From assembly GCA_973895155.1 (NCBI GenBank), contig OZ316899.1, forward strand, positions 372,001 through 436,000: 64,000 nt of DNA, written 5' to 3'. Below are positions 11,556 to 51,162 of this stretch, one piece after another; positions within the stretch are counted from its first letter, which is position 1, and every line of letters begins with the position of its first letter. Under the pieces are notes generated by a model. That model saw only the letters and a program-made list of their open reading frames with translations. It had not been told where the DNA came from and made no database searches. The translations under genes were made by a program, and so were the position numbers. The DNA is from Marsupella aquatica. Lineage: Eukaryota; Plantae; Marchantiophyta.

Positions 11556-11563
11556 GTAGCACA

Positions 11564-17352: not shown

Positions 17353-17664
17353 TTAATAAAACCTTGAATGTGCAATCTGGTCCACACATGGTCTATTGTC
17401 CTCATAAATAATTGTAGGCTCTTGCAGATCCGGTTGTCCCGTATTCTTGTTAATATGGGCCATCAAATTTTGGAGCCAAACACATTCCCTAGTTGCTTCA
17501 TATAAAGCAATGATCTCCGTGTGGTTTGATGATGTAGCTGCGAGGGATTGTTTTGTGCTTTTCCAAGAAATTGTTGTTTTGCCCTGCAAGAACACATATC
17601 CCGTTTGGGACTTGGCATCATCCGGATCAGACAAATATCCCGCATCAGCATAACCAGTCATTAC
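17353..17664 (-). pseudogene. Copia RNase H of Bianca element 1
   Basis: VMTGYADAGYLSDPDDAKSQTGYVF...ISWKSTKQ...EATRECVWL...IIYEDN. Confidence 0.92.
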
Positions 17665-21772: not shown

Positions 21773-21777
21773 ATTAC

Positions 21778-29830: not shown

Positions 29831-32241
29831 ATAGCAAACTATGTAAGATCATTTGGATCAGGGATAACTTTAAGCTAGCGCCAAGCGCTGCTAATGTTTA
29901 ACCAAACATTTTTGGGCCAGAGCCGAGCGCGGCTTATGTTTATGGGACTTCAAAGCCGATTGTTTGTTGGTTTTAACCGCATTTTTAGGACCAGCGCGAA
30001 GCGCGTTTTTTACTTTACCTTTATATATTACATTTTATTTACCTCCTGTGCATATTGGCAGATTTTTCTTGCGGGTCGTGTTTGTTTTAATTTCTCAATA
30101 ATTTGGGTTGTTTTCAAACAACAGTTTTCCATTTTGTTCAATATGATTCCAGGGCATGTGGACGGGGTTAGTCATCTGAGTATCTATATGATTAGTGCCA
30201 AACACTTGTTTAGTCCTGGTTTTTTAATACCACAATTCATTGTTAGCAGAAATTGTTTTCCGGTAACTATAATTGTTTGCTATTACTGTTACCTATTTGC
30301 TGTCATTTGTAAATTCCCTCCTCATACATCTCTACTAGCTGTTGAGCATAGTTGAGTAGTGTTTGCCAAAAATGCCTTGCCAGATTGACCTTGGCCATCA
30401 ATACTTAGACAAACAGATTACAGTGCTAAAAACCTAAACCTTGCAGTTGACAGTCCTGAGAGTTCCACCCGATAAACTGTAATATTCTAGGATGTGAAGA
30501 GAGGAATAAACAATGACTTTCTGATCTTCCCTCCTTACCCCATGCCATAGATGGGAGTGTAGTACATACGGTCATTGGAATACTGGTGTTGAGTGATACC
30601 GTATACCCCTAAGTAGCCACCAATTAATCAACATGTGCAAGCTCCTAACTCTAAGCCTAATTCTATACTAGTTTCTACACTATTTGCTTTAAAAAATCAT
30701 AACCTATGCTAATAATATACACAAAGCTGGGTGTTTGCCCACATTTTTTTTATACAGTGATCCCGATAAGGGTATCACAATGACTCTATGGTAGAGGTTG
30801 CCGTTGCATCTGAACGTTCCACCACAAAATCCATATGCTCCACTATAGGAGCAATGACATCTAGTGGTGAACCTTGCCACCCAGCGCCCTCACCAATCCC
30901 AACACCCATGTCTAAGTGCCCTTGGTGCCCGAACACCTCCACGGAATACCTTGAGCAAGCAACCCAGTGCCCCTTGCACCACCAGCGGCCCCTCCCATAC
31001 AAAGCCGCACTTTCTCTCTCACTGCCGCTACTCAACGGTCCTCATTGTCTGCACAAGCAACCAAGTGTCTCGGTAAGTAACCCTTTAGGATCTAGATCTC
31101 TCCAAGTCTAGCATCCTAACTCAAGCTCAACAGACATTGGTAAGTAGGTCAGCGATAGGTCCTCCCGATGCCATACGCCGGAACCAGAACCCACGCCCAC
31201 TATTCGTCCAGAACAACTCCTTTCTTGGGCGCGGCCCGGGTTCCCCCTCGTACCTATCCATCACCAACTAACCGCCCTGACCCCAGGACATGCTTGTGGC
31301 CCAAATAGTGTAGCTTGTCCTAAAGCTTGTCCCAACACGTTGGGACCAGAATGGCCCCGACTCTAGCAACCAACTCCCAATTCTGGCCCCACTGATAGTC
31401 TAGGGCCAAGCACCCTTGGAACTCAACCTCCACGCCTACTTGGCCTTGCCTCCCCAATGCAAGCACCCTTGGAAGATTGAACGCAGCTTGGCTGCTATTT
31501 CGGCAGGATTTGGCAAGCGAGCGAGCTAACACCTACAAACCTCAAGAACCCTTGGCACCCCCAGACCCAAATAAGCTTAGGAGAACATAGCCCTCCTTGA
31601 GATCTTTCCAATGCACCCAAGAAGTCCTCCAACAGACTTCCCATTGGGAAATATCGGCGTTTCCATTTGGCGCTTTCCTTTAGTGTTGCGACCGTTGTGG
31701 CTCACGACTTCGGCTTGCCCTTAGCCCCCAGGGAGACACCACTCCCCTCATATATGGTTTTGGAGACTGTTAACCACCAAAGTTGACTAGTTGCCAGCTC
31801 CTGGAGTTAACCATCCTCCGGAACTCCTAACTCCTCCACTATCCTTCTGTGTATCAATTAAACATCATACGGCTTCAATTGATCAAATTTCTCATTCACT
31901 TTTCATCTACTATTCAACCTTTTTGACAAACAATTAGTGATGACCTGTACGATTACTCGAGACAATGATCTAACTATTCTTAGTTTGATCCTCCGCCTGT
32001 TACTTGAATTGAATGTCAATTTCCCTTTTTCCCTCCAGTTAATGTTTCTTCAAAGAGGAATTCCAAACCCATTGTAGAAAGTTCCTCAGACACTGACTCT
32101 TCTTCTTCTTCTCCAATAATTCTCACCCAACTCTCAATCATGGCTTTACAATCATTCGGGGCATTTTGTAGCCCAAATGGGATGTGTTCCAATTTAAACG
32201 ACCAATTAAAGGTAGCTAATTCCATGTTACCTACTCCGGGT

Positions 32242-32570
32242 TGTCACACCATTCTGAGTAGTGTAGTAGTATATCGTGCTATTAGAGTATGTACGGTTGG
32301 TATGAGTGCTATTGGAGCCGATAAGGTTCTGTCAGGTTTGTGTGAGAGGGTACTTCTCACTTGTGAGGCATTGAAAGGTCATCTTTCAATGTTGAGCCTT
32401 GGAGAGAGAGGAGCTTGAGTGTGGCTATGGTGGCTGTGAGCTCCGCTTGTGTAACGTGGATTCCTTGAGTAGTGCAAGGTGCGTTGCCTTGACATACGTG
32501 TGTGATCGGATCAGTGCGGGATCGATGGGGTATTGTTGACCGAGATCGTTGTGCCGATTGGATGGAGATT
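32242..32570 (+). repeat. Split direct repeat A1 (matches A2 at 41340-41676)
   Basis: Near-identical to 41340-41676: about 3 substitutions and an 8-bp indel seen by eye. Confidence 0.95.
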
Positions 32571-32842
32571 ACATTGAAAGATCACATTCGAAATCTGTTG
32601 TACGGACTGTGCGGACAGAAGTTTGATTGATTGAGTTGTCGACGGTTCGTGGTAGCTCGGATTGTGTGCTGTTATCGAACAGATCGTTGGTATCTTGACC
32701 TGTATCGTTGTTGTCCGATCGGCCTGCTTCCCGATCGATGTACAGATCTGTGATTGGTGACAGGTTTTGAGTTGGAGGTCGATCGATGATTCGTGGAGGA
32801 AAGCGAATGTTGAGTAGATGTTGGACAGTGGAAGTCAATCTG

Positions 32843-33360
32843 TGAGGCTTCAGATCCGATTGTCGACTACTATGAGGCTTCAGATCTGATTGTCGGCTAC
32901 TGTGGGGCTTCAGATCTGATTGCCGGCTATTGTTGGACGATGTTGGCAAGGCACAGGTGAAGCGACGGCTCTTTTCCTGAAGGAACGGAGCTGCCAATGC
33001 CCCGTGCGACGGTATCATCGTTTCAGTGAAAGAAACGAGGGTCAAAGGTGTTGAATCAAGCTGCTGCCAGTTCTGTGGAAGGGCTGCGTTTTTCATGAAG
33101 GAAATCGACAGTTTTCGGGAGCTTTTCGTGAAGGAATTAGTCATTTTTGGGGTCAGGTGTGAGGCGCACGAGGTCACCCATCCCGGAAGTGCTCGCGCGA
33201 GGCGACGCGTGAGGTCACCCATCCCGAAAGTGCTCCCAACCGCAAGCGCGAAGTCACCCATCGCGAGCGCAGGCAGACGCGAGGTCGGGGCTATTCCGGG
33301 CCGTGAGCGCGAGGAGAGGCACAAGGTCGAGCGCGAGGAGGTCACCCATCCCGGGGCTAT
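32843..33360 (+). repeat. Tandem repeats in the 5' leader (30-bp unit x3; GTCACCCATC motif x4)
   Basis: GGCTTCAGATC(C/T)GATTG(T/C)CG(A/G)CTA x3 at ~32843-32930; (GAG/GAA)GTCACCCATC at ~33171, 33211, 33250 and 33338. Confidence 0.85.
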
Positions 33361-34087
33361 TCCCAGCCGCGAGCACTTAACTGGCAAGTTCTCATCCCAC
33401 CTTGTGTACACACAAGCTTTGACAACTTGTTGTTTAGATTCAAGCGCCAGGGGGCTTTATACACTTCCCAATTTGTTTAGAGGCCTATTCTAGGCCAAAT
33501 CAGATGCTGTTTAAGGGTTTTTGATACTTCTGAGTCCATCTAGACTCACAGATTGAACCAATTTTGCCTTGGTTCTCATCTACAACATTGGAGTGCCATT
33601 GTGAAGCCTATTATGAAGGCTCTTCCTTGAACCTTATGCACATTGTCATATTGATTTGCATTTGCTTTTGTGTGGAGAGTTGAATGGTATCCATTCTTGT
33701 TTCTGGATCCTCTTCACACATGTTTCCTGTTTATGCGCCATGTTAGTTTCATGTGGGCGCTTGATTCCATAGGAGTGATCCGGGTTTGCAACTAGACATT
33801 CTAGTGTGCTGTGTATTTCTCTCTTGGTGATGTTGGAGTGATGCCCAACACACCATGGTGAGTGCTTGTGGTGCTGACAGGGATAGATTGCCCTTAGGGT
33901 TAGCACATAGATTAGGTTAGGGTTGGTCACCACGGATTCTTCTGGTGCTGCTGGATTACCCGATGGACGACGGACCGGTTTCACTCGGAGTGGGGCACAG
34001 TTTCGGCCAGCGGCATTGGTAGCAGTGCAGCTTCAGACAGTGATTCTGATGAGGACTCAGTGACCAGTTCTCCTCATCATCAGGTGG

Positions 34088-37000
34088 TTGCACCTTTGTT
34101 GTGGGATATGGACGAGATGTACGGGGCTACAAAGGGGCCCACGACGATACTTTGGTGCAGTTGGCACAATTGATCTGGATGACTTCATCCAGGAGTTTGA
34201 TACGTGGTGCGATATGCAGACATTGCGTAAGGTCACGTTGTTTACCCCTTTCATGGCATGGAAGGGATTATTCCAGCATTTGGAGGGGCCACCCATGGAT
34301 GACTACCATGAGTTTCGGAAGGCTCATTTGGTTGAGATTGAGGCATGGAGGCAGCATTGGTCGCCTAATTACGTGTCCATCACCTATGGCACTAGTGCGG
34401 CTGCCCAACCCATTGCCACAGCTGTTGCTTCTTCTAGCAGCACTAGCCAGAGTGGCACACCATCCACCACCAGCACTCCAGCAGCATCCACCACTACTCT
34501 TACCGGTGTGATTGTGACAGGAACTGGAGTTGCGCCAACATTTAATCTTGTGGTGGAATTCTTTGAGGTACTGAAGCAGAACTATCAGGGTGTGAGAACT
34601 GATAAGTTGAAGGGTCTTCAAGAGTTCCAACGCAAGACTGGAGAGAGCCTACGTGAGGCATACACACGTATGCGCAGATTGATCACTGTCACCAAGGGAG
34701 TGACAGAGGCTCAGGCAGTCCAGTTTTGGTATGCAATTCTGGATAGAGAATTGCGACGCAGAGTGAGAGATGTCACTCTGCTTAGGGATGCAGATCCCAC
34801 ATTAGCAGTTGTTTTCACCCTTTCTAAGCGCATTGAGCTCAATATGGTGAATGAGAAGGTGGTGACTTCCGGATTTGCCAAGGAAGCACCAAAGGCTGCA
34901 TCTACATCCACTCCACAGCCTACTGCACAGAAGAGCCAGAGGGAGAAGCCTACTGCACGAGAGTCTACCAGCCAGAGACCTGTGCCCTCTTATGCTGGAC
35001 AGCAGTCAGGATGTTGGACCTGTGGTGGGGATCATGCACAGAGATATTGTCCAGATCATAGAGGATCAGGGGGAGCATCAGCGCCTGATCAGCGATAGTG
35101 TGATCATTGTGGAGCTCCTGGACACACCAAGGATAGGTGTTTCTCACTCCACCCTGAGTTACGGAGAGGAGGATCCCGTACACATGATCAGGGAAGAGGA
35201 GGTAGAGGTGGTGGACGTGATCGTGGCATGCCACATGCAGGGAGACAGGGAGGTGACGCTGCCCCTGCTATAACCATAGATCCAAAGGATGCTAAGATTG
35301 CTCAATTGGAGCAACAACTAGCTGCCATAGCTAGTTCCCAGGTGAGACCTAATTCTGGTGATGGGGCATCTACATCCTATGGACCTTCCACATCCCATGG
35401 TCCTTCCACATCTTATGGAGCTGATGGAGACCTTGCCACCATGGGATTCATGTGTGGCACTGCACATATTGATGCATCAGCAGCTTTGACACGTGGGGCA
35501 GCCAAAGCTCTTGAGCCTCGAGGAGCAGTAGTGGAGTTAGATCCACAAAGGGGGGATGCACGTCGGCAGACAAAGCTTCCTCAGTCTTTTACATTGTCAG
35601 AGACAGTTCAGACTGCCTCTATGAACCCGGTTCGGACAAACCCTGATGTGGGTAAGTTGGCAGAATCAGGTAGTGATGCAGCAGGGATGACATGTACCTT
35701 GCTGGGGGCGGCTACTGCCATAGTACGCACCCCATTATTTTCAGCGACAGACATGCTGAACTTGGGAGTTGGTCCTACAGAAGTGTTCAGATTGGCAGCT
35801 ACACTCTGTGAGGACACTCCAGTGGTTGCTTCCCATGCAGAAGCAACTTGCAGTGTTGATGCAGTGAAGACCATGCCACCTACTACTACTAGTGAGACAT
35901 GGCATGCAGCAGCAGCGAGGTTGGTGGATTTACCAGCACGCCCTGCATTTGAGAGGACTAGGTTTAAACCTAGTGTTGTGTCATTGGATAATCGGAGTGG
36001 TATCTTCCGATTAGTTGGGCCTTCTGGAGCAGTATACCAGCCAGAGAGAGTGTTACTGGATATTGGTGCTCAGCCCTTGATGTTGGGGAAGTCTGCCATA
36101 CGTGGATTGGGATTGCATCCAGAGGATTTGGAGGATTGTCCCTTTCCCATTCAGACTTCATTGGGGGGACCTACACCTACACAGCATATCACCAGGAGAC
36201 CACTTGATTTGAGGATTCAGGAAGGTCATACCACAGATAGCTCACAGATACAGGCGCGAGCTATTCTGACTAAGGCAGAGTCATATGATGTGTTGGTGGG
36301 ATGTACAGTGCTCTACCCCATGGGATTTATTCTTGATTTTTGGGAGGAATCAATGTCATATAGACCTGATTGGCAGTCAGGAGATGCTCGATTGAGCAAA
36401 TTGCCAGTGAGATTTAGTGGACCTGTGGAAGGCCCTAAATCCACACCATTGTCTTTGGCAACATTCAGTGGTGTAATTGCTAGACTTGATGATTTGATTG
36501 AGGGTAATGCGCATGCAGCCGATGTTCCACCATTGGAGGAGTCTCATGAGGAGCACATCATGCGAGGATTACCTGTTGGCAGTGTTGTGCCACCAGTGTG
36601 GGGCACTGCACAGGCCTTGCCACAGGCAGCAGCACGATTGGTACATGATGCATGGCGTCATGCTTTTACACCACAGTCAGGAGCAGAGCAGTCTCTTGCA
36701 GATGGACCTGTGACTCTTTCACCATTGGATACCACTCCTATTGCTTGGCAGTATCCACCGGAGGGTATTTGTTTGTTGGATCTTTTTGGTGGGATTAGCA
36801 CTGGATTGGCTGCTGTTCTTCAGGCAGGAATTCCTGTGCGTCGTTATTTGTATGTGGAGACAGATGAGACAACACGGAGGGTCTCATTGCGACATGTGGC
36901 TATGTTGGTGGATAGATATCCACAGTTGCTGCCAGTGGATGCTGTTCGTGGTTATCAGCATGCACTACCTGCTGATATTTCATTGTTGGGGGCGGATCAT

Positions 37001-40000
37001 CTACATCGTGTTGGCCCCATTGATTTGGTGATTGCTGGTTGGCCATGTCAGGGCCAATCTAGAGCTGGCGTTGGGCATGGACTTCATGATCCACGCTTTG
37101 CATTGTTTTGGGAGATGTTACGGGTGCTACGTCATCTCCAGCTACATCAGACACAGTCTCCAGCATACATTTTGGAGAATGTGCCATTGTTAGGTGATGA
37201 TCGTAGTCGGATTGTTGCCAGTGTTCACCAGGTGAGGTCTTGGATTGGACCTGCTGTGTTATTGGATGTTGCACGTGTGGGTTCTCATGCACATCGTCCA
37301 CGCTTGTGGTGGACTAATTTGATCCCATGTGAGGTGCTGAAGCGTGCATTTGACAACATTCCACGCTCACCAGCCTTAGTGGTGGATGATATTTTGGATC
37401 CAGGGCGTCGTGCACAGGGTGTGACCCAACCTGATAGACCTCCATTGGCAATGGTCAATGCAGTTGGGTGCCCACGTTGTGCATTACCCACTCTTGTAAG
37501 CCACTCTGCTTCATATGCATTCAGAGCAGGTGGCCCTGGACTTGTATGGGACACAGCTCTCCAGCAGTTAGTGGAGCCTACTGCTGATGAGAGAGAGCGT
37601 GCTATGGGATTTTTGACTAGCACCACTGCAGTTGCCTCTGTGTCAGAGGGTTTGCGGCGCCAGGTTCTTGGTCAAGCAATGGATTTGAATTGTTTGACTT
37701 GGATTATCAGCTTGGGAGTAGCTGAACAGTTGCGGATGCGCTCTGCCGGAATTACTGATTATCCCTTGGTGAGCTTGCGGTCCACTGAGACAGTATTGAC
37801 CACAACTGGGGGCGAGCAGACAGTCCATGGACCTATGACAGGATTGGCGGCTGGACAGATTGTTGAGCAGGAAGGGACTGCTCAATCTACTGCTAAATAG
37901 CAATCATCGGCTATCTCTTCTACCCTACAAAGAGATATTAGGGATTTGGTGGAGAGTTGGGAACCACAGCTTGGCCCTAAGTTAACAGGGGAGGAGAGAC
38001 GTTGCATGCATCGATTCCTGAAGAGTTATTGGAATTGTTTTGCATTCAGCATGAAGGATTTGGGGATATTGAAGGGCCCTGGTATTCAGATTGAATTGGC
38101 TAGTGATGCGCCAATCTTTCGTAGACCATACCGTTATAGTGACATGGAGAGAGCTCTGATTCAAAGCAGAACTCAAGATTTGTTGGAGGCTGGATTGGTG
38201 GAGATTTCATACGGGGAGTATGCATCTGCCACAGTGATGCCAGCCAAGAAGGATGTGCATGGCAATTACACAGATAGGCGCATGTGTGGTGATTATAGAC
38301 CTATTAATCGCCAGACAAAATCTGATCGATATGCCATGCCCACACCTGAGGAGATCTTTGATGTTGTGGGGCATGCAAAGGTTTTCAGTTCATTGGATCT
38401 GAGGGCAGGATACCATCAGCTTCCAATTAGGCATGCTGACAGGTCCAAGACAGCATTCTGGGGGATTGATTCTTATGGCAAAGATCGTTTGTATCAATGG
38501 TTATTCTTACCATTTGGGTTGAAGAATGCACCAGCTGAGTTCCAGAGAGTCATGGATCGAATCCTTGCAGGTTTGGATTTTGTCAGATGTTATATTGATG
38601 ATATTTTGGTCTATTCTTCTACTGTGGAAGAACATCAGCAACACTTGCAGACTGTGTTGGAGAGATTGAGAGCACATGGGTTGAAGCTCCATCCTAGCAA
38701 GTGTAAGTTCTTCCAAGACCAGATTGAGTATTTGGGCCACACCATATACCCAGGGGGATTGGGTGTACAGCAGACTAAAGTGGAGGCCATTACACAGATT
38801 CCTTGTCCTACTGATGTGAGTAGAGTTCGTGCATTCTTGGGATTGGCGAGCTACTACAGGAGGTATGTTAAAGGATTTAGCCAGCTTGCTAAACCTTTGA
38901 CCATACTCACTAAGTTGGATCAGGAATGGATTTGGGGTGATGACCAGGAGCATGCCTTTCAGGAGTTGAAGCAAAGGTTGGCATCATCCCCTATTTTGAG
39001 AAGACCCATTTCAGGCAAACCATTTCAGCTACACACTGATTGGAGTGGAGTAGGACTTGGAGCAGTGCTGACTCAAAAGGATGATGAGGGGAATGAGTTT
39101 GTTGTGGCTTATGCCAGTAGATCAAACAATTCAGCAGAGGCTAAGTATAGCTCTTATGAGGGAGAGTGTTTGGCAGCAGTGTGGGCTGTTGCACACTTTC
39201 GTTGCTACTTGTTTGGTAACCCCTTCACCTTGATCACTGATCATCAGCCTCTTAAGTGGTTAATGGAGTCTGACAAGCTTACAGGGAAGCTTGCACGATG
39301 GGCATTGTTGTTACAGGAGTATGATTTCCAGGTGGTGCATAGGCCTGGAAAAGTGAACTTGGATGCAAATGGATTAAGCCGCAATCCATGTACCAGTCAG
39401 CAGGATGAGACTGGAGCCAGATGGCATGATGAGTCAAATAAGGAGATGGTGCCAGGATGGCATGCATCTGCCTTTCTTTGTTGGGTGCCAGCATACAGTG
39501 GATCTGTGGACTCTACCTCATTGGATGGAGTGGATGATGAGTCTTCAGATGTGGATGTTGGTGAAGTAACTTCTGGACAGCAAGATATTCACAATGATGT
39601 GAGAGTGTTGGAATATCTGCGCAATAGTTCTATTGTTGGCAGTGTTGATGCCAAGGAACGTGACAGGGTTCTACAGAGAGCCAAGAGGTTTCGATGGGAG
39701 GGAAACCATCTTTTGAGAGTACTGCATGATGGTAGGATGTTGGTGGTACCAAAACCATCACAACGAGTACATTTGGTGCGACATGCGCACGAGGAGTTGG
39801 GTCACTTTGGTGTGAAGCGCACTTACAGCTTGCTGCAGACACAGTATTGGTGGCGTGGTATGCACACTCATGTCCAGCAGTTGATAGCTAAGTGTGTGGT
39901 ATGTGACAGAGTGAGAGCATCATTTAATGCTCCCACTCCCCAGTTGCACCCGTTACCGATCATGGGTTTGGGATATCGTTGGAGTTTGGATTTTGCTGGT

Positions 40001-41026
40001 CCATTACCTCTTACCCAACGTCATAATCGGTATGTTTTGGTCATGGTGGAGCACTTCTCCAAGTGGATTGAGCTAGTGGCGTTGCCAGATAAAGCCAGTG
40101 GAGGAGTTGCTGCTACATTTTTGGATCGTGTACTCAGTCATTTTGGAGCACCAGCTGAGGTGTTGACTGATCAGGGAACTGAGTTCCGTGGAGAGTTTGA
40201 GAGTTTGTGTGAACAAGCTCTGATTGATCATCGCACTACCTCTCGTGATCATCCTGAGGTAGATGGATTAGCTGAGAGAGTTGTGCAAACTGTGAAGAGA
40301 GGATTGCGTAAGTATGGCTTGCAGGTTGGTCATCTGGGAGATTGGGATCTCCAGCTACCTTGGTTAGCTATGGGCTACCGTTTCAGTCGGCAAGCATCAC
40401 TTGCATCCTTCTCACCCTACTTTTTGCTCTATGGTAGAGAGCCAGATTTGCCAGCAGCTATTCGTCGTCACGTTGCACCAGTTGTGAACTTGGATGATCC
40501 TGATGTTTGGGTCAAGGTGTGTTCAGAGAGAGCACGGGTATTTCAGAGAGTGATGCCCATGGCTTTTGACAACCTTGCCATTGCCCAACATCGTGATACT
40601 TTGAGGTATGCCACTATTCGTGGAGGAGGTTACCGTGCAAGCATTCGACGATTTTATCCTGGTGATTATGTTTATTTGCAGTAGACAGCACCCATGACAC
40701 TTGATGTGACCGCAGGCCGAACAATCTTACGTGTGCGTGAAGTGTTGCCTTCTGGTGTCCTGATGTTGGAGGGACGCAATGGTATGGTTTGGAAGGATCA
40801 TGTGCGCAACTGTGCACCATGTCACCTTCCCAACATTGATGGTACAGTAGATCCAAGCTTGGCACATGTTCGTGCTGGCTTGAAATGTATGTTGTGTGGA
40901 TCTGCTCAGGGAGCAGCTACTATGTTGATTTGTGATAAGTGTTCTAGAGGATGGCACATGTCATGTTTGACACCACCATTGCAGGTGATTCCTAGTGGAT
41001 CATGGTTGTGTCCTCAGTGTCGGTGA
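34088..41026 (+). CDS. gag-PR-DNMT-RT-RH-INT-PHD polyprotein (one frame, ~2310 codons, three in-frame TAGs at 35096, 37898 and 40682)
   Basis: ORFs 34088, 35228, 37946 and 40694 are all in the same frame. Knuckles CWTCGGDHAQRYC and CDHCGAPGHTKDRC; protease VLLDIGA; RT YIDD; RH TDWS...YASR; integrase HEELGH...CVVC, LDFAG, TDQG, LAER, FYPGDYV. The true start codon is unclear. Confidence 0.9.
36767..37710 (+). CDS. C5 cytosine DNA methyltransferase domain (DNMT3-like) within the polyprotein
   Basis: Motif I LDLFGGIST, II YVETD, IV GWPCQ (catalytic PC), VI ILENV, VIII AHRPRLWWTNL, IX ERERAMGF, X RRQVLGQAMD, in canonical order with no stops. Confidence 0.93.
40886..41023 (+). CDS. PHD finger at the integrase C-terminus
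   Basis: C4HC3 pattern CMLC...ICDKC...WHMSC...WLCPQC. Confidence 0.92.
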
Positions 41027-41199
41027 AGCCGACTAGTTATCATTTGTGTTCTCTTGGCAGATATGGATTGCAGGTAGGTGATCGATGGGGCTCACTTGCA
41101 CCCGGCCTCCTGATCTTCACACCTAAAAAGGTGTATATCAACCTTGTAGAACTCATGGCTAGCTAGAGTTAGGGGACCTTACTCCCAGCTAGGGGGGTG

Positions 41200-41337
41200 A
41201 TTGTGGGTTTTGGACATGTGTGGACATGAGTTCCACTTGTATTCCATTCTCTTGTATTTGTGATGTGGCAGTGTGACTATGTCTGGATGTATGTGACAAG
41301 CGATGTATGTTGTGTAGCGATATGTATGCGCACGACA
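41200..41337 (+). repeat. Split direct repeat B1 (matches B2 at 41677-41814)
   Basis: 138 bp, apparently identical to 41677-41814; directly preceded by AGGGGGG-TG (PPT-like, 41191-41199). Confidence 0.95.
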
Positions 41338-41339
41338 GC

Positions 41340-41814
41340 TGTCACACCATTCTGAGTAGTGTAGTAGTATATCGTGCTATTAGAGTATGTACGTTTGGTA
41401 TGAGTGCTATTGGAGCCGATAAGGTTCTGTCAGGTTTGTGTGAGAGGGTACTTCTCACTTGTGAGGCATTGAAAGGTCATCTTTCAATGTTGAGCCTTGG
41501 AGAGAGAGGAGCTTGAGTGTGGCTATGGTGGCTGTGAGCTCCGCTTGTGTAACGTGGATTCCTTGAGTAGTGCAAGGTGCGTTGGCTTGACATACGTGTG
41601 TGATCGGATCGGTGCGGGATCGATGGGGTATTGTTGACCGAGATCGATGGGGTATTGTGCCGATTGGATGGAGATTATTGTGGGTTTTGGACATGTGTGG
41701 ACATGAGTTCCACTTGTATTCCATTCTCTTGTATTTGTGATGTGGCAGTGTGACTATGTCTGGATGTATGTGACAAGCGATGTATGTTGTGTAGCGATAT
41801 GTATGCGCACGACA
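41340..41814 (+). repeat. Terminal repeat A2+B2 (475 bp, TGTC...GACA)
   Basis: Separated from B1 by the dinucleotide GC (junction CACGACA-GC-TGTCAC). Confidence 0.95.
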
Positions 41815-43811
41815 GGGTCTTACTCAGAATTTGTCTCTTATCTATTACTCAACATTTCACTTTGGCAAGGATTTTTTTAACAATTTATAATCTCAATCAC
41901 CACATGCCATACTATTCTGATATTTCCTTTTACAGGTTCCAACCAAATCCAAATGAATTCTCCATTGTCAAATGTTAATATTTCCAGCCATCTCTTTTTC
42001 AGTATCAATTTCTTAGTTTTGATTCTACTGACATACAACAAATATAAGCTATGCAATCGAATGCTTCATGAAGTCCTGCCAACAGGCCTTGATTGCATCT
42101 TTCATTCCATGAACACATCAATTTCTTTACATGGTTTTTCTTCCATGGGCTTCCATCTACCTCCAGATCTAGCAATCCGACACTACCTCCTCCTGGGCTG
42201 CCTCTCGAGCTTCCTGATCCTGAAAGTTTCCACAACAAAAGACCCTTTCCACTCCTACTTTGCTACCCTATATTTCTTCTACAGGCAGGTTTGTCCAACT
42301 TCCTCTAACAATTAGCAGTTGTAACTGTCAAACTGCTTATTCAGTTTTTCTAACCGCTTTATTCCACTAAAGGCACATGTTAATCATTACTTGTCACAGT
42401 AACTCTTAACTGTTACTTGCTACTGGATCCTGCATCTCTTAACTGGTTGTCTTTTAGTTAATCGTTCTTCGGAACGATCAGTCGAAGTTTTGTCCTCGGG
42501 TTCGGTGGCTCCAATGTTAAGCGCTTGAATGGCGACCTCCACCGGTTCTACTTGGGTTTCACTGACTCTTGCCCCTGATCGCCGGTATGTGGGGTGGGTC
42601 CTCATTCTCTGGAATCCTAATATCTGTTGAGTTTTCTTGTGGCGGTTCTCTGCAATTCTCACTACCCAACACTCATTCATTACACGGTGACAGTCTCTCT
42701 CTTGTGTACCAAATTGCTTGTGAAATTCATGGCCAGGCACTCCAAACAATTGACATCCAGCTTCTTCCCACACTTGATACACAACTGTATTGATTTGCAG
42801 AAAGAAATTGTACATGTGTTGGCCTGATCCAACCGTTCTACAAAAATGATTGGTTCGCTTCCGCATCGACAACCCTGCATCCTGGTGTTCTCTGTTCACT
42901 CTAGCTCTGCAAGCACTTGGACCTAAAGCGCACATTTTCCCATCTTCCAAGGGAATATCACATCCTTCATAAACTAACTCGCTACCATGCATGCCCCAAA
43001 TTGCTTCAATGGTTACTCCAATCAGGCAGAGGACTCCAGGTTGCTCCATCTCTGTAAAGTTGCCACTATACCACAAAAACTGAACCTCAACTAGAAAAAT
43101 GAAGTTCGTCTAGAGGTTTTTAGGGTTAACCTAGTGAAGGCCCTAAAGTCCTTACTTCTACTTAACTATAACTCAATGATTAGCTTAATTGCTACTAATC
43201 CTGACTTGCTAAAATTTAACATTTCAAAGACTTGCCACCCCCGGACCAGCTTTGGTCCCTAAACTTCTGGCCCCCAACCTGGACCCTATCTCGCATACTG
43301 GGCGCGCCACCAACTGGCAATGCCCATAACTTTCTCGTTAGGCGTCCGCAAGTGGAGTGCCTTAGCCTGTTGTGATTGGGCCGACCCAGTGCTCATGCCT
43401 AGGCCCTCAGGTCTCATTTCCGCTCAGGGTCCCCAATCGGCCAAACCCGGATCGGGCCATAACTCACGCCCCAAGCGTCCGTTGCCCATGGCGTCAACTC
43501 CATTGGCCATGGGCCCAAGAGGAGCTCACACTCAAGCCCTCAGAACTCAAAGTCCGTCCAAGGGTCCGGATGGTCAACCTTGAGCCCGACCCCTTTTCCC
43601 CTTGACCCGACCACCTCTCAGCTAGCCTAAGTCCTTAGTGTGTGTCACCAGCTTGGCGCTTTGCCTTTGCCAGTGCCACGTCTCATTGCCCACAAGTATC
43701 CCCATGCTAAGTCCTCCCCGGATTGCCTATCAGGGCCTGGACTATAAAGGAGCTTGGCGTAGGAGTCAGTGACGCCGGAGCTAAGTGTTAAGGTAGTTGA
43801 GTTCCACGACT

Positions 43812-44330: not shown

Positions 44331-44333
44331 GGA

Positions 44334-45690
44334 CTCTTGAAGGATGCATAGCTCATGAGAAACTACATGTGAAGAATGAGGAAGAGAATGCTCTCCCTCC
44401 AACCTATACCCCTCAAGGGGGCAGAGATGATTGGGCCTAAACCAAGCGTAGCTTATCCTAATGTAATCCAGGGTTAACTAACCCAAGTAAGGCCAAACTA
44501 GAAATCAGGAACTCAAGTCAATTCCTAACATTGGCCTTGCACCCTCGCAAAAAAAAAAACTCCTGAGAGAAGGGGGTCTATTGTAACTTCCCCTTCTTAA
44601 TGCTCCCTTATTAAAAGCTCCCACAACAAGGGTGCATTAAAGCCCCCCACCTCACCAGCTTTTAGTCACACCTGCTAGGGCCTCGTGCCCTGCAATAAAG
44701 TACACCCCTGACAAGGGAGTTTGCTGCTCCCACTCCCTACTCCCCCTCCCTACGCCCCCTTCCTACTTAATGCAATATCTTTGGGTAAACTGTATCTCTC
44801 CCATGCGCTGCTTGTACGGCCTTGCACCGGCATACAAAAGTACTCACCCTCCCCTTTGCGCCTAGCTCCTCGTTCCAGTTTCCTTTGGTACAAATACCCG
44901 TCCGCGCGGCCGCAAAGAGTTGCGTGCAACAACCTCGAGGAGTGTACAAAGAGGGGAAATGACACCTTTCCTAAGGAAAAAAACCTTGTTGTTTCCCACA
45001 AGAACCCACAACCCCTCCAACCCATAGGTGATAAACTAACCACTAAGAGCCATACTTGAAATTTTCAAACTCAAAACAACAATACATAAGATAATATTGC
45101 TCCGCACTCGCCAAATGAAATATTATGAAATTTCCACCAAAACAAAGTGCCTACTAATACACACAGTAAATTGTTCTCTCAACAGTACCTTCAATGACAC
45201 CTCCAACACTTCGATTGAAGTTTCAATTGGGAATCCATCACCTCATTCAAACAAGAAACGATCAATGCAAAATGACCAGTAAAACAATCATGCATCCGTC
45301 AACGACGACTAAATCTTTCACCCCAATTCAACACAATGAACGATCCCACCATTTTGCCTAGGCACCTAAACCTTGAACACAAAAATCTGATACACACTTG
45401 TAAGAAACTATTGGCTCCAGACTAGACAACAACTACGGCACATGAGAATACTCAATCTCACACTACACCAACAAGACACCACAATGGAGAAACTCCTGAA
45501 GTATCCATAGCTCATGAGAAAGTACATGTGAAGAATGAGGGAGAGAATGCTCTCCCACTAACCTATACCCCTAGGGGGGCCGAGATGTGTGGGCCTAAAC
45601 TAAGCTGATCTTATCCTAATGTAATTCAGGGTTAACTAAGCCTAGTAAGGCCAAACTAACTAAGTCAGGAACTCGAGTCAATTCCTAACA
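44334..45690 (-). repeat. Pair of ~195-bp copia LTR-like direct repeats (44334-44530 and 45494-45690)
   Basis: Both end ...GTCAATTCCTAACA; the right copy is followed by ATCTCCACCTT (PPT AAGGTGGAGAT on the minus strand). Confidence 0.7.
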
Positions 45691-46267
45691 ATCTCCACCT
45701 TGACTCCAATGTCATAACGGTGATGATGATTGTCAAGTAGTGATGGGAGGTTCTCCATTGGGTTGACACATCATTGTTGGGTTGGCCTGCGTAGTTTGTT
45801 GGTGTTGTTCTTGTGTCTCTCCTGGGCAATTTCACCATGGCCTACTGGTTTGCTTTTCATGATAGGTTTTGCCTTTGCATTGTGACTGTGCTCCTTCCCT
45901 TGCATGCAAGAATGATGCCCTAGGAGGGGTTTTTGGGCAAGGTGCTTTTTTATTGTAGTGCCTTGGCCGCTGAGACCCATGGTTGGTCGACTCAAGTGTT
46001 CCCCTTTGGGCCGTTTCGTTGTGTGTTGGTTTCTGATACTAGCCCAATTACCTATTCCTTGAAAATAGATATGAAAAAAAACAAATCTTGCACAAGAACA
46101 TTCTATGCTATTTGATCTTTGCCCATCCCTGTTTTTTTTTCAAAGTCAAAATTTTCAATTTTACGTTTATTCTGCGTGATGGGGGGAACCAGCGCGGCCA
46201 AACGGCATCAGAAACCCATCCCTGTTTTTTGTCCACTCTCAATTCAATTGTGCCTTTATTTATAGTC

Positions 46268-46625
46268 AATGTTACTTTTGTCCATCCTCATTTTAAGATT
46301 TGTTCTTATTGAGACTCATTATCACTTTTGTATATATTGGGAGTTGCTTTGGGAATTCCGGTCTAAAGACTTCACTTATACCTAGGCCCTTTAATGTCGC
46401 TTCTGTGGATACTCATTTTAAGATTTGTTCTTATTGAGACTCATTATCAGTTTGTCTCTATTGGGATTGTCTCTATTGGGAGTTCCAGTCTGAGACTTCA
46501 GTCTATACCTAGGCCCCTCAATGTCACTTTTGTCCATCCTCCTTATCAGTTTTGTCTCTATTGGGAGTTAGAGTCTAGAGTCTATACCTAGGCCCTTAAG
46601 AGTAGTCTATACCTAGGCCCTTAAG
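46268..46625. repeat. Degenerate tandem repeat (~120-125 bp unit) with TATACCTAGGCCC x4
   Basis: CTCATTTTAAGATTTGTTCTTATTGAGACTCATTATCA x2; TATACCTAGGCCC at ~46378, 46504, 46584 and 46608. Confidence 0.75.
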
Positions 46626-48419: not shown

Positions 48420-50463
48420 TTAGGCGAGATAGCGATAGAGTTTCCTGTCAGATCTATCCCTTTCAAGAAATTCACGTTCAATAAGAGATTCGATACGCTT
48501 TTTAATGACTGCAGGGTTGGGAAGAAATCGGGCTTGTAACTGCTTTGTGACCTCGCTGATAATGTTATTGTGATCTAAAACACGTCTCGACTTCATAATT
48601 CTAACCACTGCTGCTTCTATCTGTGGCTTCCTATCTTCCTCCACTTTCTGGCGGGTTTCTTGCTTTTCAGGTTCACTCTCCTTCTGAGCAACTACTGTAC
48701 TAATCTTGACCTTGTAAAATTTACTCACAAACTTATCATTGAAAAGGAAAACATCGTCCTCCCTAATGTCCTTGCTCATCGGCTCCTTCCGCAGGACATT
48801 TTTGCCTTTCACACATGCTAGTGATTGGAGATTCCTCTTCAGATCCTGACATGGCATATCGGTAGCTTGCTCAATTTCTCGATAATTTAACTTGTCAGCC
48901 ATGTTGAAAAGCGAGAGGACACACATTTGATACGTTGAAACATTGAGCTCGTGTTTTTGTCCATTCCCAAAGGTGGCTTTCAGATCTGCAGTTCCCATGT
49001 TGGTTTGCCATGTAAGGCGCCGACCTGTATGTGTAGACAAATAGTAAGCCTTGAACTTGTCGCACATACTGAGAACCTCTGTTGGCAGATTACACCTAGC
49101 ACCGGATTGCGTTGGCCAAGAACCGGTTGTGAGCACCTGCACAGCTAGAGTGGGGCCTTCACTAGATTCGGTAGAAGAGAGCATGGCATTGAAACCATGC
49201 ATGGTATCCCTTGATGTCTTCATATCAGTGAACATGCCCTCGAGCTTGGATGTGAACTGGTATCCACACTCGGTCTTCAACTTAACAATCAAGCTTCTTT
49301 CAGCATCATCAGACACAGTTCTGCCTGACAAGAGACGCTTTGCCAGATGCTGCTTATAATACTTCTCAAATACGTCTTTCTCTTGCAAATACCGGAACAA
49401 CATCATCACCTTGTCCAGCACGGTCTCAACGTCCTCCTCGCTGACACCCTTCAAACCCTTACGAAGCTTATCATCTACAAAAAGAGAAATAAATTCCGGC
49501 GACCTAATATTGAGATTGATGAAGTACTCGAAGGAAGAATTCAATGCATTTTGAAAGGTCTTATCGTTGTTAAAAGACAAGCGTATGACATTGTCATATT
49601 TATCCTTCTCATCCAGTAGCCCTTGCACAAACTCTACAGGGTCCTTCAATCTTTCGGGATCCATCACAAGCTGTTTGCCGGTTTCTCGAAGATGGCTGAT
49701 CATGACCTCCCGAATAATTTGCAATCCGGTGGTAACACGACGAAACAGACTATACATTCGGGCCAGATCATCGTACTTATCATCGACGAACATGGACACG
49801 AGCCCAGAATTCTCCATCTCCACAAGAAGCTTCATGTGAGAACCGATCATTTCCCTCTCAACGACTGCAGTAATTTTCATCTCACTCTGTCCATCAAGAT
49901 AGTGAGTAACCCGCTCTATTTCTTCGTTGAGCCTCCTCTCTGCCTTTCTCAGATAGTCCGAACAATCACTGGTTTGAATGAATTGTTGTGATTCGAGTCT
50001 GTAGAAGTCGGCCGCGGCGTCCAGAAAGGGCTTCTCAAAGTCTTCCTGATACACAGTTGGCCCCAGATCCATTAACATCTTGGTAATGTTGCGCATCAAC
50101 CCCCTATTTATAACCTCACCAGTTCGTTCCCTATGTACAAGGTCAAGAAGTGTATCCAACAAGCGATCCCTGATTTTAGATGATCGGAGAATGTTATCCC
50201 TCCACAAATTGAGCCCCAGCTCATGAACAGGAGTCTTATTATAATTAGTCACATACGTTCTGTCCATATACATCAGAATGTCCCGAATCATCTGCAAAGA
50301 TTTGTTGTGCTCCAACCACTTATTGTTGAGTTCTTCCAAAAACAGCCCTCCTTGGGCAGACTCAATCGCCTTCGCAACTTCACGCAGATGCTGTGTCATG
50401 GTGTTAACGAGACCCGAATATAGTTTCTCGCCATACTTATGAAGGACCATGTTGTAGGCATTC
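48420..50463 (-). CDS. CUL3: Cullin-3, coding exon 2 (spliced protein 734 aa)
   Basis: Acceptor TGTAG|G AAT GCC TAC. NAYNMVLHK...cullin repeats, EKDVFEKYYKQHLAKRLL, neddylation motif IEAAVVRIMKSRR, C-terminus RKLYRYLA. The exons total 2205 nt in frame. Confidence 0.97.
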
Positions 50464-51162
50464 CTACACAACAATCCAGGAAGGTACAACACGTTACTGA
50501 AATAGCAAGCTACCACCTACAATAGGGACTAAATTTCTTGGATAAGCATGTTTCTGGGGCTTCCCAAATCACCAAGAGCCGTCGTAATTCCTAGAGAAAG
50601 CATCGCCACAACATCCCGAGCCCCTAAGGGATGCGACAGGACGTACGGGAGGAAGCGAGAGTAGAGTAGAGAAGAAAAGAGGGACTGTGGGTGTGTGGGG
50701 GGGGGGACTGCTATCACGCCGATAACCAGCCTCTAGATACCAGTTCTACCAAAGTGATAACACAGTTGACCAGGCACGCAGTACCGGGGAGGGACGACAA
50801 AATGACGGCGAATACCGAGGAGGGCAGGAACATGCTCCCAAGCACAGTAACGGTTACTCTTTCCCTGACAAATTGGTTTAAACTGCACGGAAGACAAGCT
50901 CCTCAAGCTCGTGCCCCCTGACCCTCGATAACTGTCCAAGAATACCCAATGCAAACGCAACGGAAGTACTAGTCTTCCCAAAAACCCGGAGTGGGCGATG
51001 TCGGCTGGTGGATATTAATCTGCAAATCGAGTCACATGACTCGAAAAATCGAACCAACAGGATAAATCCGGCTGAACTGCCGAAATACGTCTCTTTCGGC
51101 AAAGCGTGGAAACCTGAGAGAGTGGTTCACTGACCAACGAAGAGAATAGAGTAATTGCATAC

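What the first reader, a model, noticed from the sequence alone, without database searches (positions are those of the whole stretch)
36767..37710. Gypsy retrotransposon carries a DNMT3-like cytosine methyltransferase inside its polyprotein
Seen: all conserved C5-MTase motifs (I LDLFGGI, IV GWPCQ, VI ENV, VIII HRPRLWWTN, IX ERAMGF, X LGQAMD) lie without stops between the protease and RT, in the same frame as gag and pol. The element is young (terminal repeats ~99% identical by eye, intact TSD). Established, from memory: DNMT-bearing LTR retrotransposons were described in dinoflagellates and the charophyte Klebsormidium (de Mendoza et al. 2018) and proposed to methylate their own cDNA. Inference: the neighbouring CUL3 and Bianca/CACTA elements point to a land plant, so this would be a recently active DNMT3-like retroelement family there, able to pre-methylate its own copies or alter host methylation.
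Basis: partly seen in the sequence, partly recalled or inferred. Interest (0 to 1): 0.93.

Follow-up and report, generated by a model that had tools for sequence, protein, structure and literature searches.

The report
Liverwort Gypsy retrotransposon carrying a DNMT3-like methyltransferase
A young but slightly damaged copy of a jumping gene in a leafy liverwort carries its own well-conserved DNA cytosine methyltransferase; this kind of element was described in 2018 in a freshwater alga, and it turns out also to live in land plants, including the model liverwort Marchantia.

Summary
All six quoted C5-methyltransferase motifs lie at 36776-37684 without stops, in the frame of gag and pol. Pfam PF00145 passes its cut-off. 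The best sequence and fold matches among solved structures are DNMT3A/B/C.

The element (32241-41814) is a Ty3/Gypsy-type retroelement with a DDE integrase, TG..CA ends and a 4-bp target duplication. CUL3 identity (98% to Calypogeia fissa) places the host among leafy liverworts, so it is a land plant.

- The repeats are not plain LTRs. They are arranged A-coding-B-A-B, as published for KnitGypsy-Dnmt3 of Klebsormidium.
- The coding frame carries three in-frame stops. One is a conserved leaky-type UAG between ORF1 (gag-PR-DNMT) and ORF2 (RT-RH-IN-PHD). The other two damage this copy.
- A PHD finger follows the integrase.

The family is large: more than 560 clusters at 50% identity, in liverworts, Sphagnum, Closterium and chlorophytes. 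One Marchantia polymorpha copy has only the boundary stop. The DNMT domain is under strong purifying selection (dN/dS about 0.09).

Verdict: a real feature and a new, land-plant member of the known Gypsy-DNMT3 kind. Enzyme activity and role remain untested.

The parts
32241..41814 (+). Whole inserted element, laid out as A1 - leader - ORF1 - ORF2 - PPT - B1 - A2 - B2. Ends are TGTCA...CGACA. The 4-bp target duplication GGGT lies at 32237-32240 and 41815-41818.
   Evidence: The same layout and 4-bp duplications occur in Marchantia L002, L008 and L010, Calypogeia L003 and Scenedesmus L006.
32241..32571 (+). Repeat A1, the left terminal repeat.
   Evidence: 3 mismatches and 2 indels against A2.
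32572..34063 (+). Long non-coding leader. It holds no conserved coding, and no tRNA-type primer binding site was recognised.
34064..37900 (+). ORF1, gag-like / protease-like / DNMT3-like. It ends at a UAG that is conserved in relatives. This copy carries one extra premature in-frame stop and no frameshift.
35999..36343 (+). Protease-like stretch. It is recognised mainly through relatives that hit PF13650 and PF13975. Here it is below threshold, and its catalytic motif differs from the relatives'.
36728..37756 (+). DNMT3-like C5 cytosine methyltransferase domain, with motifs I-X at 36776-37684.
37898..37906 (+). ORF1/ORF2 boundary: an in-frame UAG followed by CAA UCA, which fits the leaky-stop context UAG-CAR-YYA.
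   Evidence: The stop is present in the window, L001, L002 and L003. The full CAR-YYA motif is present in the window and L001; L002 keeps only CAR.
37901..41026 (+). ORF2, RT / RNase H / integrase / PHD. Domains: RVT_1 38270-38746, RT_RNaseH 38933-39322, Integrase_H2C2 39755-39919, rve 39974-40255, PHD 40886-41020. This copy carries one in-frame stop and no frameshift.
41186..41199 (+). Polypurine-like tract (G6 run) directly before B1. It is conserved in Marchantia, Calypogeia and Scenedesmus copies.
41200..41338 (+). Repeat B1.
   Evidence: 139/139 identical to B2.
41334..41345 (+). B1-A2 junction, ...CGACA GC TGTCA... It contains the palindrome GACAGCTGTC and equals the element's right end, then GC, then its left end.
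   Evidence: The junction is conserved in liverwort and Sphagnum copies; Scenedesmus has the CA-GC-TG equivalent.
41340..41677 (+). Repeat A2.
41677..41814 (+). Repeat B2, the right terminal repeat. It ends in ...CGACA.

Best explanation
Shown: this is a recently inserted, lightly damaged copy of a Gypsy-DNMT3-type retrotransposon in a leafy liverwort.

The native layout, inferred from comparison of copies, is two in-frame ORFs:
- ORF1 encodes gag-like, protease-like and a DNMT3-like cytosine-5 methyltransferase.
- A single UAG in a TMV-like leaky context follows.
- ORF2 encodes RT, RNase H, a DDE integrase and a C-terminal PHD finger.

Inferred: the methyltransferase would then be made with the abundant Gag-type product, and RT/IN/PHD only by occasional read-through.

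Shown: at family level the methyltransferase is a selected component with intact catalytic residues, not a passenger.

Inferred, as the most likely role: it methylates the element's own DNA, either the cDNA or the fresh insertion. The PHD finger, which is of the class that reads unmodified H3 tails, would steer the integrase to H3K4-unmethylated chromatin. New copies would thus enter the genome already carrying the host's own mark.

Shown: the inserted unit is A-coding-B-A-B, with TG..CA ends and a 4-bp target duplication.

Inferred: this layout is what results if a canonical cDNA with B-A LTRs is joined end to end and then opened by the integrase at the internal palindrome where B meets A.

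Sub-confidences: identity and architecture about 0.9; catalytic competence at family level about 0.6; self-methylation as the role about 0.35; the circle-opening route about 0.3.
For: Domain and fold:
- PF00145 passes its cut-off.
- DNMT3A/C/B are the best PDB sequence hits.
- The AF2 model has pLDDT 94.5, and its top 50 Foldseek hits are all DNMT3A/B/C, with TM about 0.83 normalised to the target.

Selection:
- dN/dS is 0.089 against a copy with 88% amino-acid identity (dS 0.88).
- dN/dS is about 0.10 against Marchantia and Calypogeia copies, where dS is saturated.
- The catalytic Cys of PCQ and the Glu of ENV are invariant in 54 diverse relatives.

Family size:
- 564 clusters at E<=1e-30, and the top 150 all score above 270 bits; many are 1000-3456 aa polyproteins.
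- Twenty named Marchantia polymorpha gene models, plus Calypogeia, Sphagnum and Closterium.
- Scenedesmus and Haematococcus.

ORF layout:
- The boundary stop is present and in frame in all four liverwort copies.
- It is UAG-CAA-UCA here and UAG-CAG-UUA in L001.
- Only this one of the three stops fits CAR-YYA.
- Marchantia L002 has exactly one stop in 2,314 codons.

PHD: PF00628 hit. The nearest solved PHDs are those of CHD4, ATXR5, DPF3, PHF21A, KDM5, UHRF1 and AIRE.

Ends: 4-bp duplications flank TG..CA ends in six independent insertions. Where it could be read, the internal CA-GC-TG junction and a G-run before B1 are conserved from liverworts to a chlorophyte.

Published parallel: KnitGypsy-Dnmt3 has Gypsy domains, DIRS-like repeats and Ka/Ks below 0.2 (PMC5890265).
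Against: - No enzymatic evidence exists for this lineage. The isolated K. nitens domain gave no methylation in yeast, which the authors called inconclusive.
- This copy carries two extra in-frame stops, and its protease motif departs from its relatives, so it probably cannot act alone.
- No K. nitens sequence came back from any search, so relatedness to the published family rests on shared architecture, not on a tree.
- Placement relative to host liverwort DNMT3 and DRM was not tested.
- No primer binding site was recognised.
- The circle-opening route is a reading of junction sequences only. A DIRS-like template-switch route would give the same layout.
- CpG depletion of the coding region (o/e 0.34) is no stronger than in neighbouring Copia and CACTA elements, so it says nothing specific.
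Confidence: 0.6

Rival explanations
1. Passenger capture: a host DNMT3 gene or retrocopy landed by chance inside one dead Gypsy copy and has no role for the element.
For: The domain is DNMT3-like. This copy carries extra stops.
Against: - The same domain sits at the same place in copies from at least four liverwort sources, in Sphagnum and in hundreds of metagenome polyproteins.
- dN/dS is about 0.09.
- Catalytic residues are invariant.
- There are no introns.
- Identity to solved DNMT3s is only about 22%.
Confidence: 0.02
2. The domain is kept for something other than methylating the element's own DNA. It might place m5C on the element's RNA, or serve as a non-catalytic DNA or chromatin tether inside the particle.
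For: - The K. nitens domain showed no DNA methylation in yeast.
- De Mendoza et al. raise RNA methylation for the LINE-borne DNMTs.
- The domain sits in the Gag-type ORF1, next to the RNA-packaging part.
Against: - The invariant catalytic Cys and Glu, and a fold matching DNA-bound DNMT3A/B, argue for a catalytic DNA enzyme.
- DNMT2, the known RNA-acting relative, is not among the listed best PDB sequence or fold matches.
- The SymbioDIRS DNMT3 domains do methylate CG in DNA.
Confidence: 0.2
3. The enzyme acts mainly on host chromatin in trans. It might lay down a gene-body-like CG mark, or otherwise disturb host silencing, rather than marking its own cDNA.
For: - ORF1 would give an abundant product.
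- The element also carries a chromatin reader, the PHD finger.
- De Mendoza et al. discuss accidental activity on the host genome.
Against: - No data bear on this.
- The K. nitens methylome looks like that of land plants despite these elements.
- The PHD lies in ORF2, not on the same product as the DNMT unless read-through occurs.
Confidence: 0.15
4. The A-coding-B-A-B layout arises as proposed for DIRS and Ngaro-type elements, by template switching during reverse transcription. In that case the internal B-A junction serves as a template, not as an integrase cutting site.
For: The layout matches that of DIRS-like elements. The A-to-B junction is precise in three species.
Against: - There is no tyrosine recombinase; a DDE integrase is present.
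- TG..CA ends and 4-bp target duplications occur in six insertions.
- The B-A junction is exactly right end + GC + left end and is palindromic.
- One copy has an extra A-B unit, as a multimeric joined form would give.
Confidence: 0.3

Closest known systems
KnitGypsy-Dnmt3 of Klebsormidium nitens (de Mendoza et al. 2018, PMC5890265)
   Same: - Ty3/Gypsy domain set.
- An intronless, non-rearranged DNMT3-like domain inside the polyprotein.
- Conserved catalytic residues.
- Ka/Ks below 0.2.
- Repeats arranged as in DIRS (A-coding-B-A-B).
   Different: - The host is a land plant (a leafy liverwort), not a charophyte alga.
- Sequence-level relatedness could not be tested, because no K. nitens protein was returned.
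- The paper's text does not mention a PHD finger (0 occurrences), the leaky UAG, or target duplications.
- The domain order of the published element could not be read, because figures are not held.
SymbioDIRS-Dnmt3 of Symbiodinium (same paper)
   Same: A DNMT3-like domain in the Pol polyprotein, A-coding-B-A-B repeats, and two coexisting domain orders.
   Different: Those elements use a tyrosine recombinase and belong to the DIRS class in an alveolate. This element has a DDE integrase, TG..CA ends and target duplications.
Chromoviruses (Ty3/Gypsy elements with a chromodomain at the integrase C-terminus)
   Same: A histone-tail reader module is fused behind the integrase, presumably for targeting integration.
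   Different: The element also carries a DNMT, and its repeats are permuted.
Cellular DNMT3A/3B/3C
   Same: Fold (TM about 0.83 normalised to the target), linear motif order, and motifs of the same classes (PCQ against PCN, ENV, RxR, and an ER..GF motif IX).
   Different: About 22% identity. There are no PWWP or ADD domains on the same product. The domain is about 60 residues longer and is embedded in a retroelement ORF.
Leaky UAG read-through of the tobacco mosaic virus type (UAG-CAR-YYA), and gammaretroviral in-frame gag-pol read-through (recalled from established knowledge, not tested here)
   Same: An in-frame UAG with a CAR-YYA context separates an abundant upstream product from the replicase part.
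   Different: Here the upstream product includes protease and a methyltransferase. Read-through itself has not been shown.
DAM-LTR / EpiLTR elements (bioRxiv 10.64898/2026.05.21.726589)
   Same: LTR retroelements that carry DNA methyltransferases together with chromatin readers.
   Different: Those carry adenine methyltransferases, and a DNMT4-related cytosine enzyme with chromodomains. The authors treat streptophyte Gypsy-DNMT3 as a separate acquisition.

Membership tests
Gypsy-DNMT3 retrotransposons (KnitGypsy-Dnmt3 type) | Ty3/Gypsy domain composition: RT, then RNase H, then DDE integrase. | tested here: met
   RVT_1, RT_RNaseH, Integrase_H2C2 and rve occur in that order.
Gypsy-DNMT3 retrotransposons (KnitGypsy-Dnmt3 type) | A non-rearranged DNMT3-like C5-MTase inside the element's coding frame. 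| tested here: met
   Motifs I-X are in linear order in the gag/pol frame. PF00145 hits. DNMT3 gives the best matches.
Gypsy-DNMT3 retrotransposons (KnitGypsy-Dnmt3 type) | Repeats arranged A-coding-B-A-B. | tested here: met
   The same arrangement occurs in Marchantia, Calypogeia and Scenedesmus copies.
Gypsy-DNMT3 retrotransposons (KnitGypsy-Dnmt3 type) | Purifying selection on the DNMT domain (Ka/Ks below 0.2) and conserved catalytic residues. | tested here: met
   dN/dS is 0.089-0.10. The catalytic Cys and Glu are invariant in 54 sequences.
Gypsy-DNMT3 retrotransposons (KnitGypsy-Dnmt3 type) | Groups with K. nitens copies in DNMT and RT trees. | not testable with these tools
   No K. nitens protein appeared, and none can be fetched by name.
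DNMT3 family of C5 DNA methyltransferases | C5-MTase catalytic motifs: I FxGxG-like, IV PC, VI ENV, VIII RxR, IX and X. | tested here: met
DNMT3 family of C5 DNA methyltransferases | Closer to DNMT3 than to DNMT1, DRM or bacterial enzymes. | tested here: met
   PDB phmmer gives DNMT3A at 1.5e-11, against 2e-4 for HaeIII and for a DRM. The Foldseek top 50 are all DNMT3A/B/C. No tree with plant DNMT3, DRM or CMT was made.
DNMT3 family of C5 DNA methyltransferases | N-terminal PWWP and/or ADD reader domains on the same protein. | tested here: not met
   Pfam finds none in ORF1. A PHD finger lies elsewhere, at the end of ORF2.
DNMT3 family of C5 DNA methyltransferases | De novo DNA methylation activity. 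| not testable with these tools
   The only published test of this kind of domain (K. nitens, in yeast) was inconclusive.
DIRS-like retrotransposons | A tyrosine recombinase in place of a DDE integrase, and no target-site duplication. | tested here: not met
   rve and Integrase_H2C2 are present and there is no PF00589. A 4-bp duplication occurs here and in five other insertions.
Canonical LTR retrotransposon | Two identical LTRs at the ends, a primer binding site after the 5' LTR and a polypurine tract before the 3' LTR. | tested here: inconclusive
   TG..CA ends, the duplication and a polypurine-like tract are present. However, the repeats are permuted (A...B-A-B) and no tRNA-type primer binding site was recognised.

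The most novel reading that the evidence does not exclude
These elements may belong to an ancient clade of Gypsy-like elements, spread across green plants and algae, with two distinctive properties. First, they would carry a self-contained chromatin kit: a DNMT3-like writer and a PHD reader. Second, they would integrate not as a standard linear cDNA but through an end-joined (2-LTR-circle-like or multimeric) intermediate, which their DDE integrase opens at an internal palindromic end-to-end junction. The clade would still be active in land plants, with an apparently intact copy in the genetic model Marchantia polymorpha.
Probability: 0.25. Interest if true: 0.8.

Novelty: new member of a known kind. 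Interest (0 to 1): 0.6.

Why it matters
Retrotransposons that encode the very enzyme class hosts use to silence them have been described so far in dinoflagellates and one charophyte alga, and what the enzyme does for the element is still unknown.

Finding the same kind of element in liverworts changes what can be studied. The copy here is young, there are many copies in Marchantia polymorpha, and one Marchantia copy has a reading frame broken only by the conserved boundary stop. That moves the question into a land plant for which genomes, methylomes, transcriptomes and population data already exist.

Three further features were not found described in the papers I could search: the PHD finger behind the integrase, the DNMT placed in the abundant ORF1 product ahead of a leaky-type stop, and the permuted repeats combined with integrase-type target duplications. 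Each gives concrete, checkable predictions about how such elements deal with chromatin and how they integrate.

Tried and rejected
- Exact-match look-up of the window's ORF1 product: not on record.
- Looking for Klebsormidium relatives. The two domain-restricted word-index searches, the all-library profile search and one cluster look-up returned liverwort, moss, Closterium, chlorophyte and metagenome proteins but no K. nitens name. The paper's supplements hold no sequences or gene ids I could use.
- A coding function for the 1.5-kb leader. Six-frame pieces gave only one weak match to Calypogeia and none to Marchantia. I read it as non-coding.
- Pfam support for gag and protease in this copy. 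Both are sub-threshold only: Retrotrans_gag E=0.019 and Asp_protease_2 E=0.044. There is no CCHC knuckle in the gag piece. These assignments rest on relatives.
- A tRNA-type primer binding site after A1. None was recognised by eye in three species, and I did not pursue it.
- CpG depletion as a sign of self-methylation. It is not specific, because neighbouring Copia and CACTA elements are equally depleted.
- A second copy in the window. There is none; the Gypsy fragment at 384-2648 is only 30% identical in RT-IN and has no DNMT.
- One search used two out-of-frame query pieces by my mistake. It was redone correctly, and one search should be ignored.
- The plain-LTR reading of the repeats is rejected.
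- The DIRS reading is rejected, because of the DDE integrase and the target duplications.

Full report
**1. The observation**

One search places them at these coordinates:
- motif I, LDLFGGI, 36776-36796
- motif IV, GWPCQ, 37037-37051
- motif VI, ENV, 37175-37183
- motif VIII, HRPRLWWTN, 37292-37318
- motif IX, ERAMGF, 37595-37612
- motif X, LGQAMD, 37667-37684

The order is linear, not rearranged as in plant DRM enzymes. Pfam PF00145 scores 37.7 bits against a cut-off of 22. The next ORF in the same frame (37946-40684) has RVT_1, RT_RNaseH, Integrase_H2C2 and rve. A short ORF after it (40694-41026), again in the same frame, is a PHD finger.

**2. What kind of methyltransferase it is**

- Against all solved structures by sequence, the best hits are DNMT3A (1.5e-11), DNMT3C and DNMT3B. 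HaeIII and a plant DRM follow at about 2e-4.
- An AlphaFold2 model built on a 54-sequence alignment is confident (mean pLDDT 94.5, pTM 0.93).
- Its 50 best Foldseek matches in the PDB are all DNMT3A/B/C catalytic domains, with TM about 0.83 normalised to the target and about 22% identity.
- In the 54-sequence alignment the catalytic Cys of PCQ and the Glu of ENV are invariant. The motif VIII arginines and the motif IX ERE are at least 90% conserved.

"DNMT3-like" is supported at the level of best match. I made no tree with plant DNMT3, DRM or CMT.

**3. The host**

The large exon of a CUL3 gene at 48420-50516 (-) is 98% identical to Calypogeia fissa. It is 93% identical to Apopellia, 91% to Marchantia paleacea and Riccia, about 88% to Sphagnum and 80-83% to vascular plants. 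Neighbouring elements include a Copia RT, a CACTA transposase and an unrelated Gypsy fragment. I did not test the "Bianca" lineage assignment.

**4. The element's ends**

Self-comparison shows two repeat families, not one:
- A: 32241-32571 and 41340-41677
- B: 41200-41338 and 41677-41814

The layout is A1 - leader - coding - B1 - A2 - B2. A1 and A2 differ by 3 mismatches and 2 indels, and B1 and B2 are identical. The unit begins TGTCA, ends CGACA and is flanked by a 4-bp duplication, GGGT.

The same layout, the same TG..CA ends and a 4-bp duplication recur in five other independent insertions:

| Locus | Species | Duplication |
|---|---|---|
| L002 | Marchantia polymorpha | GGTT |
| L010 | Marchantia polymorpha | CCCT |
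| L008 | Marchantia polymorpha | CCGG |
| L003 | Calypogeia fissa | AGGT (this copy has an extra A-B unit) |
| L006 | Scenedesmus, a chlorophyte | CGGC |

In every copy where I read these boundaries (window, L002, L003, L006, L010):
- B1 is preceded by a G-rich polypurine-like tract.
- The B1-A2 junction reads right end, then GC, then left end. In liverworts this is ...CGACA GC TGTCA..., a palindrome.

L008 and the Sphagnum copy L005 also show this junction.

De Mendoza et al. [quoted passage not shown] 4c legend). This element shows exactly that. Here the DDE integrase and the target duplications show that it is not a DIRS element.

My reading is an inference:
- The canonical cDNA would have LTRs of the form B-GC-A. 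These are bounded by the polypurine tract on one side and the leader on the other.
- The integrated, permuted form is what one gets if such a cDNA is joined end to end and then opened at the internal palindrome.
- The extra A-B unit in Calypogeia fits a multimeric joined form.
- A DIRS-like template-switch route cannot be excluded.

**5. Reading frames**

The whole coding span (34064-41023) is in one frame, with 3 in-frame stops and no frameshift.

One stop is native:
- Comparison with relatives shows it is the ORF1/ORF2 boundary after the DNMT domain.
- It is present and in frame in all four liverwort copies examined.
- It is a UAG followed by CAA UCA here and by CAG UUA in the 88%-identical copy L001. 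That fits the UAG-CAR-YYA context, which I recall from established knowledge as the tobacco-mosaic-virus-type leaky stop.
- Neither of the other two stops has that context.
- Marchantia copy L002 (Mp_4g09160, chromosome 4) has exactly one stop in 2,314 codons and repeats 99-100% identical, so it is apparently intact.

The native design is therefore ORF1 = gag-like, protease-like, DNMT, followed by ORF2 = RT, RNase H, integrase, PHD, reached by read-through.

The window copy carries two extra stops, one in ORF1 and one in ORF2:
- The ORF2 stop is shared with the Calypogeia copy at the aligned codon but not with Marchantia.
- The ORF1 stop is private to this copy.

The protease catalytic motif in this copy also departs from its relatives. 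This copy is therefore young but probably not autonomous. The Calypogeia copy L003 has 15 stops.

**6. Family and selection**

The DNMT domain has close relatives in several lineages:
- an unplaced sequencing-run contig (88% identity)
- 20 named Marchantia polymorpha gene models (about 60-73% over most of the domain)
- Calypogeia fissa (72%)
- Sphagnum (49-58%)
- Closterium (40%)
- many metagenome proteins

A profile search of 1.84 billion representatives gave 564 clusters at E<=1e-30. The best 150 all score above 270 bits, and many are polyproteins of 1000-3456 residues. Named members include "pol" of Scenedesmus sp. PABB004 and proteins of Haematococcus lacustris.

Two architectures exist:
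- Type 1: gag-PR-DNMT-RT-RH-IN(-PHD). This includes the window, Marchantia, and some continuous metagenome polyproteins.
- Type 2: RT-RH-DNMT-IN-PHD. This includes Scenedesmus and many metagenome and transcriptome sequences.

The PHD finger and the permuted repeats occur in both types.

dN/dS of the DNMT domain is 0.089 against L001 (dS 0.88). It is about 0.10 against the Marchantia and Calypogeia copies, where dS is saturated. The first two are answered in the element's favour. The third cannot be tested here.

**7. The PHD finger**

The nearest solved relatives are the PHD fingers of CHD4, ATXR5, DPF3, PHF21A, KDM5A/B, UHRF1 and AIRE. From established knowledge these mostly read unmodified H3 tails or H3K4me0. 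By analogy with the chromodomain of chromoviruses, I infer that it targets integration to H3K4-unmethylated chromatin.

**8. How it most likely works**

Shown:
- the domain's identity, conservation and selection
- the two-ORF design and the stop context
- the ends and target duplications

Inferred:
- The DNMT is made in Gag-like amounts.
- It methylates the element's own DNA, as de Mendoza et al. proposed for the DIRS elements.
- The PHD steers integration.
- Integration proceeds through an end-joined intermediate.

The only published activity test of a Gypsy-borne domain (K. nitens, in yeast) detected no methylation and was called inconclusive. The SymbioDIRS domains did methylate CG. Rivals are action on RNA or a non-catalytic role, action on host chromatin in trans, and a template-switch origin for the repeats.

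**9. Novelty**

The kind is known. It was described in 2018 and is cited as "streptophytes (Gypsy-DNMT3)" in 2025-2026 papers. The 2018 survey list shown included Physcomitrella and Selaginella, and "Marchantia" occurs nowhere in the paper or its held supplements. My searches of the held literature found no description of these elements in liverworts or other land plants.

I did not find the following described in the papers I could search:
- occurrence in land plants, including a model species
- the spread into chlorophytes
- the two domain orders
- the PHD finger
- the leaky-type stop
- target duplications around permuted repeats

I file it as a new member of a known kind.

**10. Slips**

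- My script printed the stop-to-stop segments of the element's frame with coordinates. Searches also reported between which domains the stops fall. Nothing was deleted, I did not repeat those places in notes or in this report, and later scripts printed counts only.
- One search also used two mis-framed query pieces. It was superseded.

Noticed in passing
window 40886-41020 (within ORF2, 37901-41026): A PHD finger follows the integrase where chromoviruses carry a chromodomain. Its nearest solved relatives are readers of unmodified H3 or H3K4me0 (CHD4, ATXR5, PHF21A, UHRF1, AIRE). It is conserved in both architectures of the family.
   Followed up: partly
window 41334-41345; L002 17240-17255; L003 15545-15560; L006 about 18495-18505: The internal B1-A2 junction equals the element's right end, then GC, then its left end (palindrome GACAGCTGTC). 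It is conserved from liverworts to a chlorophyte. This suggests integration from an end-joined intermediate opened at this site.
   Followed up: partly
window 37898-37906; L001 2308-2316: The ORF1/ORF2 boundary is an in-frame UAG in a CAR-YYA context of the plant-virus leaky-stop type. This places the DNMT in the abundant upstream product.
   Followed up: partly
L002 (Marchantia polymorpha AP019869.1, 10223128-10246964), element about 6826-17656: An apparently intact family member in the model liverwort. It has one stop (the boundary) in 2,314 codons, repeats 99-100% identical and target duplication GGTT. It is annotated only as hypothetical protein Mp_4g09160.
   Followed up: partly
L003 15454-16429 (Calypogeia fissa): The right end carries B-A-B-A-B, one A-B unit more than usual.
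   Followed up: no
L008 8213-10208 and L009 4778-6778 (Marchantia): About 1-kb tandem duplications occur in or near the long leader of two Marchantia copies. The leader is much longer there (about 2.9 kb in L002) than in the window (1.5 kb).
   Followed up: no
L004 1-127 and 10783-10909 (JGI metagenome contig): The two ends of a 10.9-kb contig carrying a type 2 element are identical. This could be a circular or tandem form, or an assembly effect of the repeats.
   Followed up: no
window 48420-50516 (-), with further upstream exon(s) beyond 50516: A CUL3 gene with nearly the whole protein (697 codons) in one exon, 98% identical to Calypogeia fissa. It identifies the host lineage.
   Followed up: partly
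window 384-2648 (+), 21734-22363 (-), 60160-62925 (+): Other mobile elements lie in the window: an unrelated Gypsy RT-RH fragment (30% identity to this element), a Copia RT (RVT_2), and a CACTA transposase (Transposase_21 + DUF4218).
   Followed up: no
window 44333-44530 / 45492-45690 and 46266-46563: A direct repeat pair (88%, about 200 nt, 1.16 kb apart) and a short tandem array lie downstream of the element. Their nature is unknown.
   Followed up: no
protein P0304: A polyprotein of this eukaryotic retroelement family is labelled in NCBI as coming from a 'Minisyncoccia bacterium' MAG. This is probably a mis-binned eukaryotic contig.
   Followed up: no
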